IMG/VR virus record: IMGVR_UViG_3300022745_000017
Location: 124,001-188,000 of that record
Direction: 5' to 3' (one strand)
Length of the DNA: 64,000 bases
The notes below the pieces were generated by a model that did not search any database, was not told where the DNA came from, and saw only the letters and a program-made list of their open reading frames with translations. The position numbers and the translations under genes are program-made. This document shows positions 11,718 through 17,190 of the stretch, one piece after another. Each line of letters begins with the position of its first letter. Position 1 is the stretch's first letter.

Positions 11718-12392
11718 ATGGAAAACACGGTCAAGAAATCTGAGACTACCAACTACAACGTCGGTGACAAGATCGTCATCTGCTCAACTGCCCTTAAGCA
11801 CCCAGGTTACCATGAGCACATCCGTGATCTCAACGATGAAGGCAAACCAGAGCTCGCTGCTTTTGCAGCCTATGACTATTGTCAAGCCACCATCACCAAG
11901 ATCACCCATAGTGAGAACGAAGGCCATACCCACCTCCAAGTAGAGGCTGTCATCCTCGAAGACAACCTCGTTTTCATCCAAGAGTCCTTTAGCCATAAGC
12001 CTACCATGGGTGGACAAGCCCGCTGGCGTCTACAGACAACCGAAGGTGTGGACTACACCAAAGGCGAAGATGGCGTGGTCACCCCTTGTGGGCGCTTTCA
12101 AGACTTTACGCCAGTTGAGTTTGCACTGCGTCACTGGTGGCGCGATGTGAGCTTCATGGACTGGGGCCCAGCCCTCATGGTGGCATGGGGTCAGATGTGT
12201 GTGCAAAACTGGCCGGACTTGTTTACGCTGTGTGAGCAAATCGCTGACCCTGAGGTCTTGCAAATCCCTGAGATGCTCGACCAAGAAGAAACCCATCACT
12301 ACGAACTCACAGGGCCACAGTACCATAACCAGCAATGTGTGGCTTGTCAGCTCACAGCGCACTTTCAAGCCGACAAAGCGTTTGTAGTTTAA
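11718..12392 (+). CDS. hypothetical protein
   Basis: AAGGA SD, CACATATC-N7-TG promoter motif at 11660. Confidence 0.8.
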   Translation: MENTVKKSETTNYNVGDKIVICSTALKHPGYHEHIRDLNDEGKPELAAFAAYDYCQATITKITHSENEGHTHLQVEAVILEDNLVFIQESFSHKPTMGGQARWRLQTTEGVDYTKGEDGVVTPCGRFQDFTPVEFALRHWWRDVSFMDWGPALMVAWGQMCVQNWPDLFTLCEQIADPEVLQIPEMLDQEETHHYELTGPQYHNQQCVACQLTAHFQADKAFVV

Positions 12393-12401
12393 GGATTAGC
12401 C

Positions 12402-12890
12402 ATGAAGACGTTTCTCAGTGCCAGAACGCGCTTAGCCCTATTTAACCCAGAAGGCCAAGTCCTACTGATGGTCAGGGGTTCAAAGCACCTAGGCATTCTC
12501 TTGCCTCCGGGTGGTGGAGTTGATGCATCAGAAGACTTCGATGCCTCGATGCAACGAGAAGTCCAAGAAGAAATACAGCTTCCGGACGACGCAGTTATCT
12601 AGGACTACGAAGTCAAGTACAGCCACCGCTTACCTCAGCACATCGGTGCGTTTGAGAAGCACTACTTCCACACACAGCACCCGAACATCATCACCTTTGC
12701 AAAGTGGTATGTCGCCAGGACTAAACAGCCCGAACAAGTCACTCTCAGAGAACCAGAGAAGTTTTGCTTACACGCTTGGTTCCACCCGCACCAAATCCAC
12801 CCCTTTGCCATAAAACACGGCTTTGACATCGGAGACGGTGTTGAGCAAATCGCCAAAGCGTATGACTACCTGCTGAGCCTGGAGATTTAA
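12402..12890 (+). pseudogene. Nudix hydrolase interrupted by in-frame TAG (12600-12602)
   Basis: Nudix box PGGGVDASEDFDASMQREVQEE; frame continues 95 codons after TAG with REPEKF..HAWF motif to TAA 12890. Confidence 0.75.
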
Positions 12891-12901
12891 ACCAGATTCT
12901 T

Positions 12902-12979
12902 TCAGTCACATATATCCGGAGATGAATCGGCGATGATGCTGACTGGTTCATCTCTTTAACTGCATCAAAAGGAGTTACT
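12902..12979 (+). promoter_or_regulatory. promoter motif + pseudoknot leader copy 4
   Basis: TCAGTCACATATA; stem 12919-12930/12943-12954; TGATGC 12934-12939 pairs GCATCA 12962-12967; SD GGAG 12971. Confidence 0.8.
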
Positions 12980-13438
12980 GTGGTTGACCTCGGTGATAAT
13001 AGCAGCTTCGGGCTGCCTCGTGTCCTGACTTGTGTCACACAGGTCATGCAAGCGCTTGGTTTTGAATACCGCCTGCGTGGCACCCCCAGGGTGCGGATCG
13101 TCATGGAAATAGGTAAAAGTGGGGTCTTGGCTGGTTACAGCCATAAGGACAACACGATATACCTTACCTTAGGGGCCCCAACAGCCGCTATGTGGCATGA
13201 AGCCGTGCACGCGGGGCAACCTGATGCCGAGCATGTGGACTACTACACCTCTCTGGGCGTCATAGACCAAGAGCTCTATTCGACATCCCGAACCGAGCAG
13301 GAAGCGCGCGCTGTGACTGCTGTGTACTACCTAGCCCGCAAGCTAGGTAGTCTGGACGAGGCAATTGCGAAAGCGGTAGCTTGCCAGAAGAAGACTAGCT
13401 TGGGCAACTTAGAGCAAGCCATATCAGCTTGTATCTGA
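12980..13438 (+). CDS. putative zincin-like (HExxH) metallopeptidase
   Basis: MWHEAVHAGQ plus downstream TEQEARA. Confidence 0.65.
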   Translation: MVDLGDNSSFGLPRVLTCVTQVMQALGFEYRLRGTPRVRIVMEIGKSGVLAGYSHKDNTIYLTLGAPTAAMWHEAVHAGQPDAEHVDYYTSLGVIDQELYSTSRTEQEARAVTAVYYLARKLGSLDEAIAKAVACQKKTSLGNLEQAISACI

Positions 13439-13443
13439 GCGAG

Positions 13444-13498
13444 ATAGTCGAGAGGTGTGCTGTACAGCACACCTCTCGACTATAATCTATTTTTCTTT
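13444..13498 (+). terminator. 40-bp perfect palindrome + T-tract
   Basis: ATAGTCGAGAGGTGTGCTGT|ACAGCACACCTCTCGACTAT. Confidence 0.75.
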
Positions 13499-13571
13499 GG
13501 TAACATATACCAGCAGTGAGTCTAAATGATGCTAAGGCTCACTATCACTAACTGCATCTAGGAGATGGATT
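13499..13571 (+). promoter_or_regulatory. promoter motif + pseudoknot leader copy 5
   Basis: GGTAACATATA; stem 13515-13523/13535-13543; GATGC 13528-13532 pairs GCATC 13554-13558; SD GGAG 13561. Confidence 0.75.
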
Positions 13572-14000
13572 ATGACCTATTTGGCATTTGTGTTATCAGA
13601 CAAGACACGTTCTCGACTGATGGCTAAGCATGGAGTCGTGGAAGACCCGGCGACAAAGGTCTACGTGCACCACGTCACAATTGACTTGACGTGGGGTGCT
13701 ACGACTGCGCATGAGTCTCGTGCGGCATACTTAAACCGTATGCAGGAGACAGAAGGCCTCCGGGTGTATGCATCCGAAAACAAGGTCAGTGCACCTAATG
13801 GAGAGACGGTCTTTGCCAAGATCGTTTTCGAAGGTGTGGACACTCTGCGCTCCACCGCAGGCCCACTCCACATCACCCTCTGGGTACTCAAACCCCTGCC
13901 TGCAAAAACAGGTAGACTCATCGCTGAAGAAGCGCTGAGTAAGTTCGATGGTCAATGGGACCCAATCCCGCTGACCGGATCTTTTCAAGTGTTAAACTAA
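13572..14000 (+). CDS. 2H phosphoesterase / cyclic phosphodiesterase
   Basis: two HxT motifs (HHVTI, LHITL) about 65 aa apart. Confidence 0.7.
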   Translation: MTYLAFVLSDKTRSRLMAKHGVVEDPATKVYVHHVTIDLTWGATTAHESRAAYLNRMQETEGLRVYASENKVSAPNGETVFAKIVFEGVDTLRSTAGPLHITLWVLKPLPAKTGRLIAEEALSKFDGQWDPIPLTGSFQVLN

Positions 14001-14011
14001 AGGAGACAATC

Positions 14012-14347
14012 GTGGAATTTAATGATATCAAGGTAGTGACTGAGCAAGCCACTGTATACTTCAGCGTGGTGGATGACCGCGTAGTAGCCGGAATTACCTT
14101 TGATGGCAAGCCGGCTTTCCCCATGTCAGCTACAAAGGCTGTGCTGGCAGAGATCAGGGATAGACTTGAGGAGGCATGCTCAGATGGTTCTTATGGTCCC
14201 TTCGCTAGTTCCTTCGAGGATGTTTGGAAGGTATTTCCAGGCACTCATTATACAGCGCGTCTGAAGACAGCGATCGGCCTGGATTACGCTGGCTGGAGCG
14301 CTTGTGTGGAAGGCATGAGCAATGTATTCATGTTCAGGTTCGGTTGA
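14012..14347 (+). CDS. hypothetical protein (family C)
   Basis: AAGGAG SD + GTG; G..GP...FEDVW motif shared with 15277 ORF. Confidence 0.7.
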   Translation: MEFNDIKVVTEQATVYFSVVDDRVVAGITFDGKPAFPMSATKAVLAEIRDRLEEACSDGSYGPFASSFEDVWKVFPGTHYTARLKTAIGLDYAGWSACVEGMSNVFMFRFG

Positions 14348-14414
14348 GCTGACGTGAGGGAAATAAGAGGGCATACACCAGTCCTCTTATTTTTCTTTTA
14401 GAATGTAGTTTATT

Positions 14415-14492
14415 TCAGTCACATATAGCGACAATGAGATTGCAATAGTGCTAGTGATCTCATATACCAACTGCACTTTAGGAGTAATGAAA
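14415..14492 (+). promoter_or_regulatory. promoter motif + pseudoknot leader copy 6
   Basis: TCAGTCACATATA; stem 14434-14443/14454-14463; AGTGC 14447-14451 pairs GCACT 14473-14477; SD GGAG 14481. Confidence 0.8.
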
Positions 14493-15109
14493 ATGGAATT
14501 CGAATACATGGAGTTTGAGGAGACTGTGTCAAATACCCATATGGTGGCCCAGATGATGGGCTATCTCGGCTATGAGGTCGAAAGGGGTATCGATATGCCG
14601 ATCATCCGAGTGACTGACGAGTATGTCGGACACGCTGCCGATTGGCGACTGGTGAACGGCAGGATAAGCGCCATCACAATGTATGCTGGGCGCTGCGAGA
14701 GCTCATTGTGGCACGAGCTATGCCACCACCACCAACCGATTCTCCGGCAAGGTGTAGACCCATCATACTACCGTGAAGACGGCAGTATGGATGAGGCCGC
14801 ATATGCCGCCGACCCAGTAGAGTGCCAGGCTCGCGCCGTTGGCATGCTGGCAGTAGCTGCTAAGATACATGGGGAGCGGCGCGCTGTCGACATGGCCCTG
14901 ATAACCAGGGCTGTCCTCGGAGCCGACCCACTCCATCATGAGTTGTTCATAGCCACGCTCACCGGCTTGAAAGCTCTCTCTCTCTGTATCATGCGGAGAA
15001 GTTAGCTGTGGAGCGCCTTGATAGAGGCGATGATGTGGGTAGTTTATGCGAGGCTATCACGGCAGCCGATGAAAAAAGAGCCAAAGCACGTCGAGCAGGA
15101 CAATCCTAA
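14493..15109 (+). CDS. HExxH metallopeptidase-like paralog, frameshifted at (CT)6
   Basis: LWHELCHHHQP, VECQARAV; as written stops at 15005, removing one CT extends it to TAA 15109 with a tail matching the 12980 paralog. Confidence 0.6.
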
Positions 15110-15199
15110 GAAAGCATAAACCAAACCCAACTAACCTACCTGTAAAACGGTAGGTTAGTTGGGCTGAGTAATGTGTTTTCTTTTGTATCCTATTTTTCT

Positions 15200-15276
15200 T
15201 CAGTCACATATATCGTTGGTGACTTGGCAATGGTGCTAGTCAAGGCATATCTTTAATTGCACTTAGGAGATTGATT
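15200..15276 (+). promoter_or_regulatory. promoter motif + pseudoknot leader copy 7
   Basis: TCAGTCACATATA; stem 15220-15228/15239-15247; GGTGC 15232-15236 pairs GCACT 15259-15263; SD GGAG 15266. Confidence 0.75.
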
Positions 15277-15654
15277 ATGACACACCACGCAGCAGTATAT
15301 GAGATCACCGGATTCTTTGATGGTCAGCTGGACGGTGTAGTGGATTTTGCAGGGCTCACAGCCCTGCAAAATCCAGCACTGTTAGCAGCCGGCTTGAAAG
15401 CCGGCACAGCGGCTTGTGGCCGCACAGAGAAGGCCCTGTGGGCCATCGCCCTCAAGGAGGGTAGACTGTACCTCACCGTGGCGGGTGAGGTCGCCCAGCT
15501 AACCAAGGAGACGTGGCCTCCGGTTATCTGGGCGGTTAGTGAGCATCTGGCTCCGATCCCGCCGGAAGGCGTGGTTGGGCCGGATGTCTTTGAAGATATC
15601 TGGCACCGCATCGGTGCTCCAGTTATCGAAGGAGGGCAACATGTTCTCCATTGA
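15277..15654 (+). CDS. hypothetical early protein (family C)
   Basis: SD + ATG 15277; GVVGPDVFEDIW. Confidence 0.75.
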   Translation: MTHHAAVYEITGFFDGQLDGVVDFAGLTALQNPALLAAGLKAGTAACGRTEKALWAIALKEGRLYLTVAGEVAQLTKETWPPVIWAVSEHLAPIPPEGVVGPDVFEDIWHRIGAPVIEGGQHVLH

Positions 15655-16072
15655 TAACTGGACAGCAGAGCAGCTAAAGGATGCTGCTCTGCTGAAGGCG
15701 GGAGTGTTGTGGGAAGGCTTCTGCAAAGAGCCTCCCACAATACCGACCACCTGGCGACACGGTTGGGAGATCAAGTCAATCTTGATCCCCGGCCAGCAAG
15801 ACCCGGCCGGTGCTGAGAAGTACAGACTGGTCATAAAGCCCAAGTCTGCTGAGAACAGGCAGATTTGGCAACAAGGCCAGGTGGACTTCTTTGCTAAGCG
15901 GGGCTTCACGCCAGCGCAAGCAAAGCACCTGGCCACTAGCCGGTGGCCCTGTAAGCACGAGCTGGCTGAGGCCACTGTCAAGTACCTGCGCACCGGCAGG
16001 ATCAGCTCTTGCCTGAACCAGCGAAAAGCAGAGCTGGTCAAGCGGCTCTGTAAGGAGCTCGCTGTTTTATAA
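15641..16072 (+). CDS. hypothetical protein
   Basis: GGAGG SD before ATG 15641. Confidence 0.75.
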   Translation: MFSIDNWTAEQLKDAALLKAGVLWEGFCKEPPTIPTTWRHGWEIKSILIPGQQDPAGAEKYRLVIKPKSAENRQIWQQGQVDFFAKRGFTPAQAKHLATSRWPCKHELAEATVKYLRTGRISSCLNQRKAELVKRLCKELAVL

Positions 16073-16176
16073 ACCCACCGGTTAATCCCGGTGGGAGAAA
16101 AGACCTCAGGGCCTTTTCTTTTTTTTGTATTCGTTTACAATCACTTATTATCTATTTGAGTTCAATAGGAGAAATC

Positions 16177-17190
16177 ATGAGTAAGCAAAAACCTTTCGAT
16201 GTCCGCATCATGCGTGGACTAATCATGTCCGAAGTCACTTTCGAGAAATCCACTAGGCATTGGGCCAGCTTTGATCAGCTGATCTTCAAATCAACCTGTG
16301 GTCGCACTTTCCGCTTGGGCACAGACGATTGCTCTGCACCCGAGCTCATCGACATCGTCGGTGATTTACAAGACTTGGTTGGGCATCCTCTTTTGCAAGC
16401 GGAGTCAGTGCAGTCTAAAGCAAAGCTGTCTAACCGCTACAAGTTCTCTCGTAAGAAGGCAGATACGCACACCAAGAGCATGTGGACTTACTATAAGTTT
16501 GCTACCATCAAAGGCCATGTGCATTTGCGCTGGTTAGGTGAGTCTGATTACTATTCGGTCGAGGTAGACTTTGTCGAACTCGTTGGCCTACAAGCAGCGC
16601 ATGACCACGAGGAAGTGGCTCACCTGCGGGCAAAGCTAGAGCAAAAACAAGCCGAAGAGAAGCCAGGTAAACCCATCTTGTCCATGTGCGAGAAGCTGGC
16701 CTTTTTCGGTTACTCAGAGCTAAACGCCTGTCTAACTGTAGCCCCTGGCTCCAGCTGTATGGTGGTCAACGACAAGTCCGGCAGCACTTACACCGGGGGT
16801 GGTGACTACTTTCACACTGCGGTCGTTATGGCTTTGATAGAGTACGGGTTTGCAGACCAGATATCCTCACTGAGCAAACCCTGCGCACTCAGTGAGTTGC
16901 TGCGCGATCACGTCATGCCACTACAAACCTTAGGCATCTCCCAAGTGCAATTGGAGATTAACCCACACCTCAACCCCAACCACATACTCACACTACCCGA
17001 GTACCTAGCCACCATTGACCCACCTATCACCGAGCAAGAATCATCTGACATCCAAGATGACAACTGTTTGTTCAAATTCACTCTACAATCTGTTTGGAAA
17101 GAACATCATGGAAAATCATTCTACGCAAGGTCAGCCCAGCTCGTCAGCCATAAAGCTGCCGACTACATTAGAGCAAGCACTAGCCATTAA
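16177..17190 (+). CDS. two-domain phage protein; N-domain of the widespread WT.YK.ATIKG.V..RW.GES..YYS type
   Basis: motif recognition; GGAG SD; promoter variant at 16142. Confidence 0.7.
   Translation: MSKQKPFDVRIMRGLIMSEVTFEKSTRHWASFDQLIFKSTCGRTFRLGTDDCSAPELIDIVGDLQDLVGHPLLQAESVQSKAKLSNRYKFSRKKADTHTKSMWTYYKFATIKGHVHLRWLGESDYYSVEVDFVELVGLQAAHDHEEVAHLRAKLEQKQAEEKPGKPILSMCEKLAFFGYSELNACLTVAPGSSCMVVNDKSGSTYTGGGDYFHTAVVMALIEYGFADQISSLSKPCALSELLRDHVMPLQTLGISQVQLEINPHLNPNHILTLPEYLATIDPPITEQESSDIQDDNCLFKFTLQSVWKEHHGKSFYARSAQLVSHKAADYIRASTSH

What the first reader, a model, noticed from the sequence alone, without database searches (positions are those of the whole stretch)
13572..14000. Stand-alone early 2H phosphodiesterase under a pseudoknot leader: anti-CBASS (Acb1-like) or RNA-repair candidate
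Seen: 142 aa with two HxT motifs (HHVTI, LHITL). Knowledge: 2H phosphoesterases include T4 Acb1, which cleaves cyclic oligonucleotide immune signals, and 2',3'-cyclic phosphodiesterases of RNA repair. Inference: early expression suggests counter-defence. A nucleotide-sensing leader above a nucleotide-degrading enzyme would be a coherent circuit.
Basis: partly seen in the sequence, partly recalled or inferred. Interest (0 to 1): 0.6.

Follow-up and report, generated by a model that had tools for sequence, protein, structure and literature searches.

The report
Small jumbo-phage 2H cyclic phosphodiesterase
The 142-residue gene is real and encodes a very small, very divergent enzyme of the 2H phosphodiesterase fold from a freshwater jumbo phage; it resembles enzymes that open 2',3'-cyclic phosphates (RNA-damage clean-up) more than the anti-CBASS nuclease Acb1, and its 'pseudoknot leader' is a repeated promoter/leader cassette shared with at least a dozen other genes.

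Summary
Observation confirmed. Window 13572..14000 (+) is a 142-aa ORF with HHVTI (33-37) and LHITL (99-103). It is under purifying selection, and both HxT motifs are invariant in 15 homologues down to about 22% identity. Pfam, PHROGs, NCBIfam and PDB sequence searches give nothing for the protein itself. An AlphaFold model built on the family alignment (pLDDT 81.8, pTM 0.79) is a 2H phosphoesterase: in an exhaustive search of 48,161 chains the top nine are all 2H enzymes. CNPase is best (Z 9.1-9.6, 135 of 142 residues); Trl1 CPD, drCPDase, Acb1, MHV ns2 and a phage PDE lie at Z 7-7.6.

The family is a far branch of phrog_36523 (unknown function), which is found only in a few jumbo phages. It is not phrog_755 (Acb1). 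It lacks Acb1's C-terminal lid with W147, and F107 is not conserved. The nearest ESM-Atlas clusters carry PF08302 (tRNA-ligase CPD), in some members with kinase, HAD or CCA-enzyme domains. Relatives sit beside NT5C-like nucleotidases, and this phage encodes an RNA ligase.

Best reading: a CPD/CNPase-type 2',3'-cyclic phosphodiesterase. Acb1-like activity remains possible. The pseudoknot is real but occurs in 15 or so cassette copies, so it is not a dedicated sensor. Expression timing could not be tested.

The parts
13444..13483 (+). Intrinsic terminator of the upstream 152-aa gene. It is an 18-bp hairpin followed by a T-run (13489-13498).
   Evidence: Terminator scan; the fold has z = -6.7. 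The relative L003 carries a compensatory change in both arms (GGTGTGC/GCACACC to GGCGTGC/GCACGCC).
13496..13511 (+). Degenerate copy (TTTGGTAACATATACC) of the repeated promoter-like box TTCAGTCACATATATC.
   Evidence: Fifteen + strand copies lie directly upstream of start codons, each about 75-80 nt before a start. Alignment A6.
13515..13558 (+). 5' leader able to form an H-type pseudoknot. S1 is 13515-13523 with 13535-13543 (9 bp). S2 is 13528-13532 (GATGC) with 13554-13558 (GCATC). It abuts the SD.
   Evidence: S2: 88.9% of cells paired, 3 of 5 pairs changed on both sides, 4 of 500 shuffles as good, slid controls 22-44%. S1 covaries among copies, and the distant relative L002 has the same architecture with different stems. 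No Rfam match.
13560..13565 (+). Shine-Dalgarno AGGAGA, 6 nt before the ATG.
   Evidence: Read from the sequence; conserved across the cassette copies.
13572..14000 (+). CDS of the 142-aa 2H phosphoesterase. Key codons: Y3 13578-13580; H34 13671-13673; T36 13677-13679; R93 13848-13850; H100 13869-13871; T102 13875-13877.
14012..14347 (+). 111-aa ORF with a GTG start and SD AAGGAG (14001-14006), 12 nt after the 2H stop. It is probably co-transcribed. Function unknown.
   Evidence: no Pfam or PHROG hit; no usable Atlas hit. It is not conserved next to the 88% relative, where an unrelated 172-aa ORF follows.
12402..12890 (+). NUDIX hydrolase gene two genes upstream, interrupted by an in-frame TAG at 12600-12602. 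The linkage NUDIX ... 2H is conserved in the distant relative L002.
   Evidence: Pfam NUDIX E 9e-10. The reading frame continues and resembles the intact 162-aa NUDIX of L002. The TAG is also present in an independent sample.

Best explanation
The gene encodes a minimal, stand-alone enzyme of the 2H phosphoesterase superfamily. It belongs to a rare, uncharacterised family of large phages and is a far branch of phrog_36523.

Shown: the two HxT motifs are invariant and the fold is 2H.

Inferred mechanism: H34 and H100 act as a metal-independent general acid and general base. T36 and T102 hold the scissile phosphate. Y3 in strand 1 stacks on the nucleoside, as Tyr168 of CNPase, Tyr647 of Trl1 CPD and Phe8 of ThpR do. 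The invariant R93 probably contacts a phosphate.

Inferred function: the most likely reaction is hydrolysis of a 2',3'-cyclic phosphate, on RNA 3' ends or on 2',3'-cNMPs, as in the CNPase / tRNA-ligase CPD branch. Host metal-independent RNases (anticodon nucleases, HEPN-type abortive-infection RNases) leave such ends. The opened ends or nucleotides would then pass to a phosphatase or nucleotidase, to the phage RNA ligase, or into nucleotide salvage.

Expression: the gene has its own copy of a promoter/pseudoknot-leader cassette that it shares with about 15 other genes. It therefore belongs to a co-regulated class and does not have a private sensor.
For: Fold:
- AlphaFold on alignment A5 gave pLDDT 81.8 and pTM 0.79.
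- Foldseek against PDB put only 2H enzymes at the top, with probability up to 0.98.
- VIA-align gave CNPase Z 9.0-9.6 with 135 of 142 residues at rmsd 3.4, Trl1 KIN-CPD 6u05 Z 7.6, drCPDase 7.5, Acb1 7.4.
- In the exhaustive search of 48,161 chains the top nine were all 2H, and the only Z of 8 or more was CNPase.

Catalytic tetrad:
- H34, T36, H100 and T102 are invariant in 15 sequences, as are Y3 and R93.

CPD leaning:
- The only Pfam signal in the family is tRNA_lig_CPD, in 2 of 15 members, best E 0.018.
- The nearest ESM-Atlas clusters by features (0.96-0.97) and by structure (TM 0.64-0.69) are viral clusters carrying PF08302. One is named tRNA-ligase phosphodiesterase, with 75% of members carrying PF08302. 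In others part of the members also carry AAA_33 kinase or HAD_SAK_1, and one nearest cluster consists of CCA-adding (PolyA_pol) proteins.
- Banerjee et al. 2019 (PMC7145591) show that Trl1 CPD and CNPase are each other's closest folds.

Context:
- The phage encodes an RNA ligase (phrog_548, E 3e-30) at G000 107043-108632.
- Relatives sit directly beside NT5C-like HAD nucleotidases in four loci (L009, L010, L011, L015).
- Other relatives sit among RNR, topoisomerase and clamp-loader genes.
- NUDIX linkage is kept in L002.
- Iyer et al. 2021 (PMC7824862) assign jumbo-phage 2H enzymes to clearing 2',3'-cyclic ends.
Against: - No activity was measured; fold does not fix the substrate.
- The Z gap between CNPase (9.1-9.6) and Acb1 or other 2H enzymes (about 7-7.5) is modest.
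- The top BFVD hits are proteins annotated as Acb1, at E 3e-3.
- No polynucleotide kinase, PNK3P phosphatase, Tpt1, T4-type Rnl1 or NT5C was found in this phage. The genome has no tRNA genes.
- The RNA ligase lies about 29 kb away.
- The Pfam PF08302 hits are all below the gathering score, and none is from P0001 itself.
- The extra domains seen in the Atlas clusters are known only at the level of structural look-alike clusters, not of demonstrable sequence homologues.
Confidence: 0.5

Rival explanations
1. Acb1-like counter-defence nuclease. The enzyme cleaves 3'-5' bonds of cyclic di- or trinucleotide immune signals (CBASS, perhaps type III CRISPR cA3) through a 2',3'-cyclic intermediate, and so silences abortive infection.
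For: - It has the same superfamily and the same size class (142 against 152 aa).
- hhalign puts both HxT motifs in register with T4 Acb1, at E 0.0035.
- FBB1 Acb1 scores Z 7.1-7.4.
- The best BFVD hits are annotated as Acb1.
- Y3 matches the base-stacking Y12.
- The gene lies in a block of small unknown genes of the kind where counter-defence genes often sit.
Against: - hhalign probability is only 9%.
- T4 Acb1 is phrog_755, whereas the relatives are phrog_36523.
- The protein ends with its last beta strand (E136-141 of 142), so it has no counterpart of the lid 145-152 with W147.
- The position of F107 is not aromatic, and an invariant Arg lies one residue away.
- CNPase and CPD-type structures match better and over more residues: 135 aligned against 108-112.
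- Y in strand 1 is common to 2H enzymes in general.
Confidence: 0.2
2. Phosphodiesterase for NAD-derived cyclic phosphates, such as ADP-ribose 1'',2''-cyclic phosphate. It would work with the nearby NUDIX hydrolase to destroy ADPr-type products or signals.
For: - NUDIX lies two genes upstream, and the linkage recurs in L002 and in a Logan contig.
- Arabidopsis Appr>p CPDase is a 2H hit, Z 6.3.
- The invariant R93 could bind an extra phosphate.
- The idea is discussed for jumbo phages in PMC7824862.
Against: - The NUDIX gene here carries an in-frame TAG.
- There is no Tpt1 in the genome.
- NUDIX is absent next to most family members.
- The structural match to 1fsi is weaker than the match to CNPase.
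Confidence: 0.1
3. Other or non-catalytic role. Examples are a 2'-5' oligoadenylate-type phosphodiesterase, an RNA-binding or nucleotide-sponge protein that keeps the motifs, or a purely metabolic salvage enzyme with no role in conflict.
For: - VP3 and ns2 2',5'-PDEs are hits at Z 6.3-7.3.
- The adjacency to NT5C suits plain salvage of 2',3'-cNMP.
Against: - 2-5A is not a known bacterial signal.
- Strict invariance of all four catalytic residues argues for catalysis.
Confidence: 0.15
4. Not a 2H enzyme at all, but related to beta-sandwich repeat domains (Golvesin_C / DUF4082) of large secreted proteins.
For: The exhaustive sequence search listed four 1354-1609-aa repeat proteins at E 5e-9 to 9e-4. 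Their matched parts are Golvesin_C or DUF4082 repeats.
Against: - Each of those scores is the sum of four weak matches to identical repeats.
- The confident model is an alpha+beta 2H fold, and no beta-sandwich appears among the structural matches.
- True relatives share the full length and both HxT motifs.
Confidence: 0.02

Closest known systems
CNPase catalytic domain (2',3'-cyclic nucleotide 3'-phosphodiesterase; e.g. 4wda, 2xmi) and goldfish RICH
   Same: Best structural match: Z 9.1-9.6, 135 of 142 residues, rmsd 3.4-3.5. Both have two HxT motifs. The alignment starts at CNPase residue 166, which puts Y3 at the position of Tyr168.
   Different: Sequence identity is 14-18%. CNPase is about 70 residues longer and is a eukaryotic membrane-associated protein. 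The conserved Arg is at a different place (R307 is 2 residues before the second His; here R93 is 7 before).
CPD domain of fungal/plant tRNA ligase Trl1 (Pfam PF08302; 6u05)
   Same: It is the only Pfam family with any signal in the family. Z 7.6 with 128 residues aligned. The nearest Atlas clusters carry PF08302. The HVT...HIT motifs are the same.
   Different: All hits are below the gathering score, and P0001 itself gives none. The protein is stand-alone, with no fused kinase or ligase. Trl1 CPD has no active-site Arg, whereas this family has the invariant R93.
Acb1 anti-CBASS nuclease (T4 57B, phrog_755; FBB1 structures 7t26/7t27)
   Same: Same 2H fold and size class. HxT/HxT tetrad in register. 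Tyr in strand 1. Phage origin. Z 7.1-7.4.
   Different: Different PHROG. No C-terminal lid or W147. F107 is not conserved. Only 108-112 residues are aligned, at rmsd 4.2-4.6.
phrog_36523 (unknown function; Agrobacterium phage Atu_ph07, Sinorhizobium phage Phosso, Ralstonia phage RsoM2USA, Salicola phage SCTP-2)
   Same: Sequence relatives of the family: P0008 at E 5e-21, and the four phage proteins at 2e-27 to 9e-78. They share the YxAFVL, HHVT, R...HITLS and LTG motifs.
   Different: P0001 itself does not reach the profile (E above 0.1), and P0004 only reaches 0.006. P0001 has a 15-20-residue longer helix/strand insert between the motifs, and WVLKP in place of SLDKSKGRKP after the second motif.
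ThpR/LigT and drCPDase (bacterial RNA 2',3'-cyclic phosphodiesterases)
   Same: 2H fold, Z 6.1-7.5. They use a catalytic Arg as well as the HxT motifs.
   Different: They are about 40 residues longer. Their Arg follows the second motif (HxTLxR), rather than preceding it.

Membership tests
2H phosphoesterase superfamily | Two H-x-T/S motifs flanked by hydrophobic residues, on two central strands | tested here: met
   HHVTI (33-37) and LHITL (99-103). H34, T36, H100 and T102 are invariant in 15 sequences. Both lie in predicted strands E34-38 and E99-105.
2H phosphoesterase superfamily | Bilobed alpha+beta fold with a concave antiparallel sheet | tested here: met
   Model pLDDT 81.8. The top nine of 48,161 chains are all 2H. 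CNPase scores Z 9.6 over 135 of 142 residues.
2H phosphoesterase superfamily | Metal-independent phosphodiesterase or cyclic phosphodiesterase activity | not testable with these tools
   Needs an enzyme assay.
Acb1 (anti-CBASS nuclease) | Sequence membership (phrog_755 / detectable homology to T4 57B) | tested here: not met
   T4 Acb1 is phrog_755 at E 5e-68. Eight relatives scanned hit phrog_36523 instead (three clearly under E 1e-3 among the seven relatives). P0001 gave no PHROG hit at E 0.1 or better. hhalign probability is 9%.
Acb1 (anti-CBASS nuclease) | C-terminal lid (residues 145-152) with W147 that closes over the cyclic dinucleotide | tested here: not met
   The protein ends at residue 142, directly after its last strand E136-141. 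There is no Trp near the C terminus in any member. The feature is defined in PMC9117128.
Acb1 (anti-CBASS nuclease) | Aromatic cage Y12, W74, F107 for base stacking | tested here: inconclusive
   The Y12 equivalent, Y3, is invariant. A W/Y/F occurs in the strand after the long helix in many members but is not invariant. The F107 position is S/P, with the invariant R93 next to it. No structure-based residue mapping was possible.
Acb1 (anti-CBASS nuclease) | Cleavage of 3'3'-cGAMP and other CBASS signals | not testable with these tools
   Needs an assay.
tRNA_lig_CPD (PF08302) | Score over Pfam's gathering threshold (23 bits) | tested here: not met
   P0001 gives no hit. P0008 scores 13.2 bits at E 0.06. 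Two of 15 members match, best E 0.018.
tRNA_lig_CPD (PF08302) | CNPase/CPD-type fold as the closest structural class | tested here: inconclusive
   CNPase Z 9.1-9.6 and Trl1 CPD Z 7.6, against 7.0-7.5 for other 2H branches. The Atlas neighbours carry PF08302.
phrog_36523 | Match to the family profile | tested here: inconclusive
   P0001 has no hit at E 0.1 or better. P0004 reaches E 0.0059 and P0008 5e-21. The link is transitive, through a profile search and shared motifs.
Riboswitch / known cis-regulatory RNA for the leader | Match to an Rfam covariance model | tested here: not met
   No relevant match at E 1 or better in 12000-16000, a stretch that holds four cassette copies.

The most novel reading that the evidence does not exclude
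There are two novel readings.

First, the phrog_36523-like proteins may be a second phage family of immune-signal-degrading 2H nucleases, independent of Acb1. They would have a lid-less, Arg-containing pocket and therefore a different substrate range, for example signals or RNase products that carry a 2',3'-cyclic phosphate.

Second, and independently, the roughly 95-nt promoter plus H-type pseudoknot cassette may be a new cis-regulatory RNA class that controls a regulon of about 15 genes in a phiKZ-like jumbo phage.
Probability: 0.2. Interest if true: 0.7.

Novelty: new member of a known kind. Interest (0 to 1): 0.38.

Why it matters
The result gives a fold and a likely chemistry to a phage family that had no annotation: phrog_36523 and this far branch of it. 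That branch has only two true relatives among 1.84 billion cluster representatives.

The family is among the smallest 2H enzymes, at 115-143 aa, and it has an invariant Arg at an unusual place. It is therefore a compact test case for how 2H enzymes choose between RNA>p ends, 2',3'-cNMPs and cyclic oligonucleotide signals.

If it opens cyclic phosphates left by host RNases, it adds a stand-alone healing step to phage RNA repair in a phiKZ-like phage. That group is thought to be poor in such systems (PMC7824862). If it degrades immune signals, it is a new anti-defence family.

The repeated pseudoknot leader is a separate lead of some interest.

Tried and rejected
Searches that gave nothing or failed:
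- A single-sequence AlphaFold run was useless (pLDDT 36.6).
- Pfam, PHROGs and NCBIfam gave nothing for P0001.
- PDB sequence searches with the single protein and with profiles gave only noise.
- megablast and tblastn of P0001 against 50,697 phage records found no match.
- The word-index search found only the 88% copy.
- The first viral-contig scan found nothing. The metagenome scan failed because no stretch was conserved enough.

Hits judged spurious:
- The long repeat proteins from the exhaustive search (Golvesin_C, DUF4082). Their scores are summed over four repeats and the fold is wrong.

RNA-repair partners looked for in this genome:
- RNA_lig_T4_1, Tpt1, NT5C and PNK3P were absent.
- The AAA_33 hits are a thymidylate kinase and an AAA ATPase.
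- There is no second Acb1-like gene.

TAG recoding as the reason for the broken NUDIX was rejected:
- The genome has no tRNA genes.
- In-frame TAGs are not enriched.
- TAG ends ordinary ORFs.
- No other genetic code was used anywhere.

Other points:
- The riboswitch idea for the leader was rejected: no Rfam match, and the element is multi-copy.
- Expression timing could not be tested. Only DNA runs from freshwater metagenomes hold the sequence.
- The downstream 111-aa ORF gave no usable Atlas hit.
- Read laying was given 1,801 letters.
Full report
**1. The observation**

Window 13572..14000 (+) is an ATG-started ORF of 142 aa. AGGAGA precedes it by 6 nt.

The window is bases 124001-188000 of a 217,973-bp IMG/VR virus record with direct terminal repeats. 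Almost all of its genes lie on the + strand. Its 725-aa major head protein is of the phiKZ type (phrog_3231). It is at most 40% identical to that of Burkholderia phage FLC9 and Ralstonia phages RP12 and RP31. The DNA occurs in freshwater metagenomes from at least two studies. The host phage is therefore a distant, uncultured relative of the phiKZ-like jumbo phages.

**2. The gene is real and rare**

An 88%-identical protein (P0002) is encoded on a 1.1-kb ENA contig. Against it the gene shows 31 synonymous and 17 non-synonymous codon differences, with 37 of 63 substitutions at third positions. This is purifying selection.

The exhaustive HMMER search of 1.84 billion cluster representatives found only two true relatives. 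These are P0002 and P0004, which is 142 aa and 31-34% identical depending on the alignment. It also listed four 1354-1609-aa proteins. Their scores are sums over four identical Golvesin_C or DUF4082 repeats. I regard those as spurious, because the fold found below is not a beta-sandwich.

A profile of the three proteins then reached P0008 (132 aa, E 0.098). P0008 shares every motif and opened up the larger family:
- P0009 to P0014;
- five IMG/VR loci;
- four isolated jumbo phages: Sinorhizobium phage Phosso, Agrobacterium phage Atu_ph07, Ralstonia phage RsoM2USA and Salicola phage SCTP-2, of 344-490 kb. All of their copies are annotated as hypothetical protein.

These relatives are phrog_36523, of unknown function. 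P0001 itself matches no Pfam, PHROG or NCBIfam model and no PDB sequence.

**3. Conserved residues**

The 15-sequence alignment A5 has 22-33% identity to P0001, apart from the 88% copy. Its invariant positions are M1, Y3, A5, L8, H34, T36, R93, H100 and T102. V7, L17, H33 and P110 are nearly invariant.

Both HxT motifs are therefore under strict constraint, as expected for a catalytic 2H tetrad. There is also a Tyr in the first strand and an Arg seven residues before the second His.

**4. Fold**

With A5 as input, AlphaFold gave pLDDT 81.8 and pTM 0.79. The HxT motifs lie in strands 34-38 and 99-105. The ESM Atlas's own model of the same sequence has pTM 0.86.

- Foldseek against PDB returned only 2H phosphoesterases at the top. 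Among them were 1iuh, 1vdx, a Burkholderia phage BCSR5 phosphodiesterase, drCPDase, penguinpox cGAMP PDE, YjcG, the Trl1 kinase-CPD, VP3, AKAP18 and CNPase. E was about 1e-2 and probability up to 0.98.
- VIA-align gave CNPase Z 9.0-9.6 (135 of 142 residues, rmsd 3.4-3.6), Trl1 KIN-CPD 7.6, drCPDase 7.5, FBB1 Acb1 7.4, MHV ns2 7.3, the BCSR5 PDE 7.2 and Thermus 1iuh 7.0.
- The Foldseek-independent search of 48,161 representative chains gave 2H enzymes in all of the first nine places and in most of the first 21. The only Z of 8 or more was CNPase.
- BFVD put proteins annotated as Acb1 and other viral 2H proteins first, at E 3e-3 to 1e-1.

The 2H fold is therefore established as well as prediction allows.

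**5. Which kind of 2H enzyme**

*Points toward the CNPase / tRNA-ligase CPD branch, that is, 2',3'-cyclic phosphodiesterases:*
- It is the best and longest structural match.
- The only Pfam signal in the family is PF08302, in 2 of 15 members, below threshold.
- The nearest ESM-Atlas clusters are viral clusters of 124-157 aa that carry PF08302 in 18-75% of members.
- In other nearest clusters part of the members carry PF08302 together with an AAA_33 kinase (271 aa) or with HAD_SAK_1 (300 aa). One nearest cluster consists of 545-aa CCA-adding (PolyA_pol) proteins. These are the partners expected of an RNA-end-healing module.
- The Trl1 CPD paper shows that CPD and CNPase are each other's closest folds. 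It also shows that a Tyr in strand 1 stacks on the nucleoside in CPD, as Phe8 does in ThpR (PMC7145591). The invariant Y3 is therefore a general 2H feature and not an Acb1 mark.

*Points against Acb1 membership:*
- T4 Acb1 (57B, taken from NC_000866) is phrog_755.
- hhalign of A5 against it puts both HxT motifs in register, but with a probability of only 9%.
- Hobbs et al. 2022 define Acb1 by the tetrad, by the aromatic residues Y12, W74, F107 and W147, and by a C-terminal lid at 145-152 (PMC9117128).
- This protein stops right after its last strand, has no terminal Trp, and has S/P plus the invariant R93 where F107 would be.

*Caveat.* None of this excludes activity on cyclic oligonucleotides. 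It only means that the protein is not a member of that family.

**6. Context**

*In this window:*
- The gene follows a 152-aa HExxH-motif protein (12980..13438).
- It is followed by a 111-aa ORF (14012..14347) of unknown function.
- After that comes a 185-aa protein (14448..15005) that looks like a paralogue of the 152-aa one (WHEAVHAGQP against WHELCHHHQP).
- Two genes upstream lies a NUDIX hydrolase gene.
- The order 224-aa protein, NUDIX ... 2H recurs in the distant relative L002 and in a Logan contig.

*In relatives:*
- In four loci (L009, L010, L011, L015) the 2H gene directly abuts an NT5C-like HAD nucleotidase. E is 4e-4 to 6e-7, and two are above the Pfam threshold.
- That family dephosphorylates 5'- and 2'(3')-nucleotides (my own knowledge). 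The pair would therefore convert 2',3'-cNMP to a nucleoside, as E. coli CpdB does in one protein.
- Elsewhere the gene sits among RNR, topoisomerase II, clamp-loader and ClpX/IF3 genes.

*In this genome:*
- It encodes an RNA ligase (529 aa; phrog_548 at E 3e-30; Pfam RNA_ligase 25.8 bits) at G000 107043-108632.
- No polynucleotide kinase, PNK3P, Tpt1, T4-type Rnl1 or NT5C was found.
- It has no tRNA genes.

Iyer et al. 2021 propose that jumbo-phage 2H enzymes clear 2',3'-cyclic ends, either as part of RNA repair or to remove signals of RNA attack (PMC7824862).

**7. The leader**

The 18-bp hairpin at 13444-13483 plus its T-run is an intrinsic terminator for the upstream gene. It has a compensatory change in L003.

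A box follows at 13496-13511 (TTTGGTAACATATACC). It is the most degenerate copy of TTCAGTCACATATATC. Fifteen + strand copies lie directly upstream of start codons, each about 75-80 nt before an SD and a start codon. Within the window they are at 2552, 6000, 12901, 13496, 14414, 15199, 21738 and 32963.

The transcribed part can form an H-type pseudoknot:
- S1 is 13515-13523 with 13535-13543.
- S2 is GATGC at 13528-13532 with GCATC at 13554-13558.
- S2 touches the SD.

The support for each stem is as follows.
- S2 is kept in 88.9% of cells in nine copies. Three of its five pairs changed on both sides. Four of 500 shuffles do as well, and slid controls pair at 22-44%.
- S1 covaries, for example AGTGTGTTAG/CTGACACACT and ATGAGATTGC/GTGATCTCAT.
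- The leader of the distant homologue in L002 has the same architecture with unrelated stem sequences.
- The leader is 93.7% identical to that of L003, whereas the coding region is 85% identical.

Because the same element precedes many unrelated genes and matches no Rfam family, it is a class-wide promoter/leader cassette. Plausible roles are a translational operator, an enhancer or an mRNA stabiliser. It is not a dedicated nucleotide sensor for this enzyme.

Whether the class is early cannot be told. Only DNA runs hold the sequence.

**8. Verdict**

| Reading | My estimate |
|---|---|
| Intact 2H phosphoesterase | about 0.9 |
| CPD/CNPase-type 2',3'-cyclic phosphodiesterase acting on RNA ends or 2',3'-cNMPs left by host RNases | about 0.5 |
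| Acb1-like signal nuclease | about 0.2 |
| ADPr-cyclic-phosphate PDE working with NUDIX | about 0.1 |

It is a new, very divergent member of a known superfamily. Interest is moderate.

- Read laying received 1,801 letters.
- No genetic code other than table 11 was used.
- The broken NUDIX gene was only described.

Noticed in passing
window 12402-12890 (+), TAG at 12600-12602: The NUDIX hydrolase gene has a single in-frame TAG. The frame continues and resembles the intact 162-aa NUDIX of the relative L002. The same TAG is present in a contig from an independent freshwater sample (X2). The genome has no tRNA genes and shows no general TAG recoding. The gene is therefore a nonsense allele or pseudogene, or it depends on host read-through.
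   Followed up: partly
window 2552, 6000, 12901, 13496, 14414, 15199, 21738, 32963; also G000 20115, 27237, 67104, 67800, 74965, 109982, 121455: A repeated cassette of about 95 nt, always on the + strand. It consists of the box TTCAGTCACATATATC, an H-type pseudoknot with covarying stems, CTGCATC, an SD and a start codon. It matches no Rfam family. A distant phage (L002) has the same architecture with different stem sequences. It is a candidate new cis-regulatory RNA and promoter class of this phage lineage.
   Followed up: partly
window 12980-13438 and 14448-15005 (+): Two apparently paralogous small proteins with an HExxH motif (WHEAVHAGQP and WHELCHHHQP) flank the 2H gene. Each has its own cassette. 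The only hit is a weak Pfam match to Tox-MPTase4 (E 0.075). They may be small metallopeptidases.
   Followed up: no
G000:C1:107043-108632 (outside the window; L020 844-2433): A 529-aa RNA ligase (phrog_548 at E 3e-30; Pfam RNA_ligase 25.8 bits, just under threshold). It has an unassigned N-terminal region of about 190 aa. No kinase or phosphatase partner was found beside it.
   Followed up: partly
L009 5404-5907, L010 5404-5919, L011 5406-6005, L015 3486-4004: NT5C-like HAD nucleotidase genes directly abut the 2H homologue in four metagenomic phage loci. In L015 the stop and start codons overlap. This suggests a two-step pathway from 2',3'-cNMP to nucleoside.
   Followed up: partly
window 13444-13483: The perfect 40-nt palindromic terminator breaks the Logan assembly graph of run X1. 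The contigs end there, and a 40-mer contig has double depth.
   Followed up: no
L003 568-1086 against window 14012-14347: The gene downstream of the 2H gene differs completely between this phage and its 88% relative (172 aa against 111 aa, unrelated). The leader and the 2H gene are conserved. The gene set is therefore mosaic at this spot.
   Followed up: no
L004 3993-7799: In the contig that carries P0008, the neighbouring ribonucleotide reductase large subunit is 1268 aa. It has homing-endonuclease/LAGLIDADG hits, so it probably contains an intein.
   Followed up: no
window 16156-17190 (+): A 344-aa protein with DUF7448 (E 1e-11) and phrog_2650, of unknown function.
   Followed up: no
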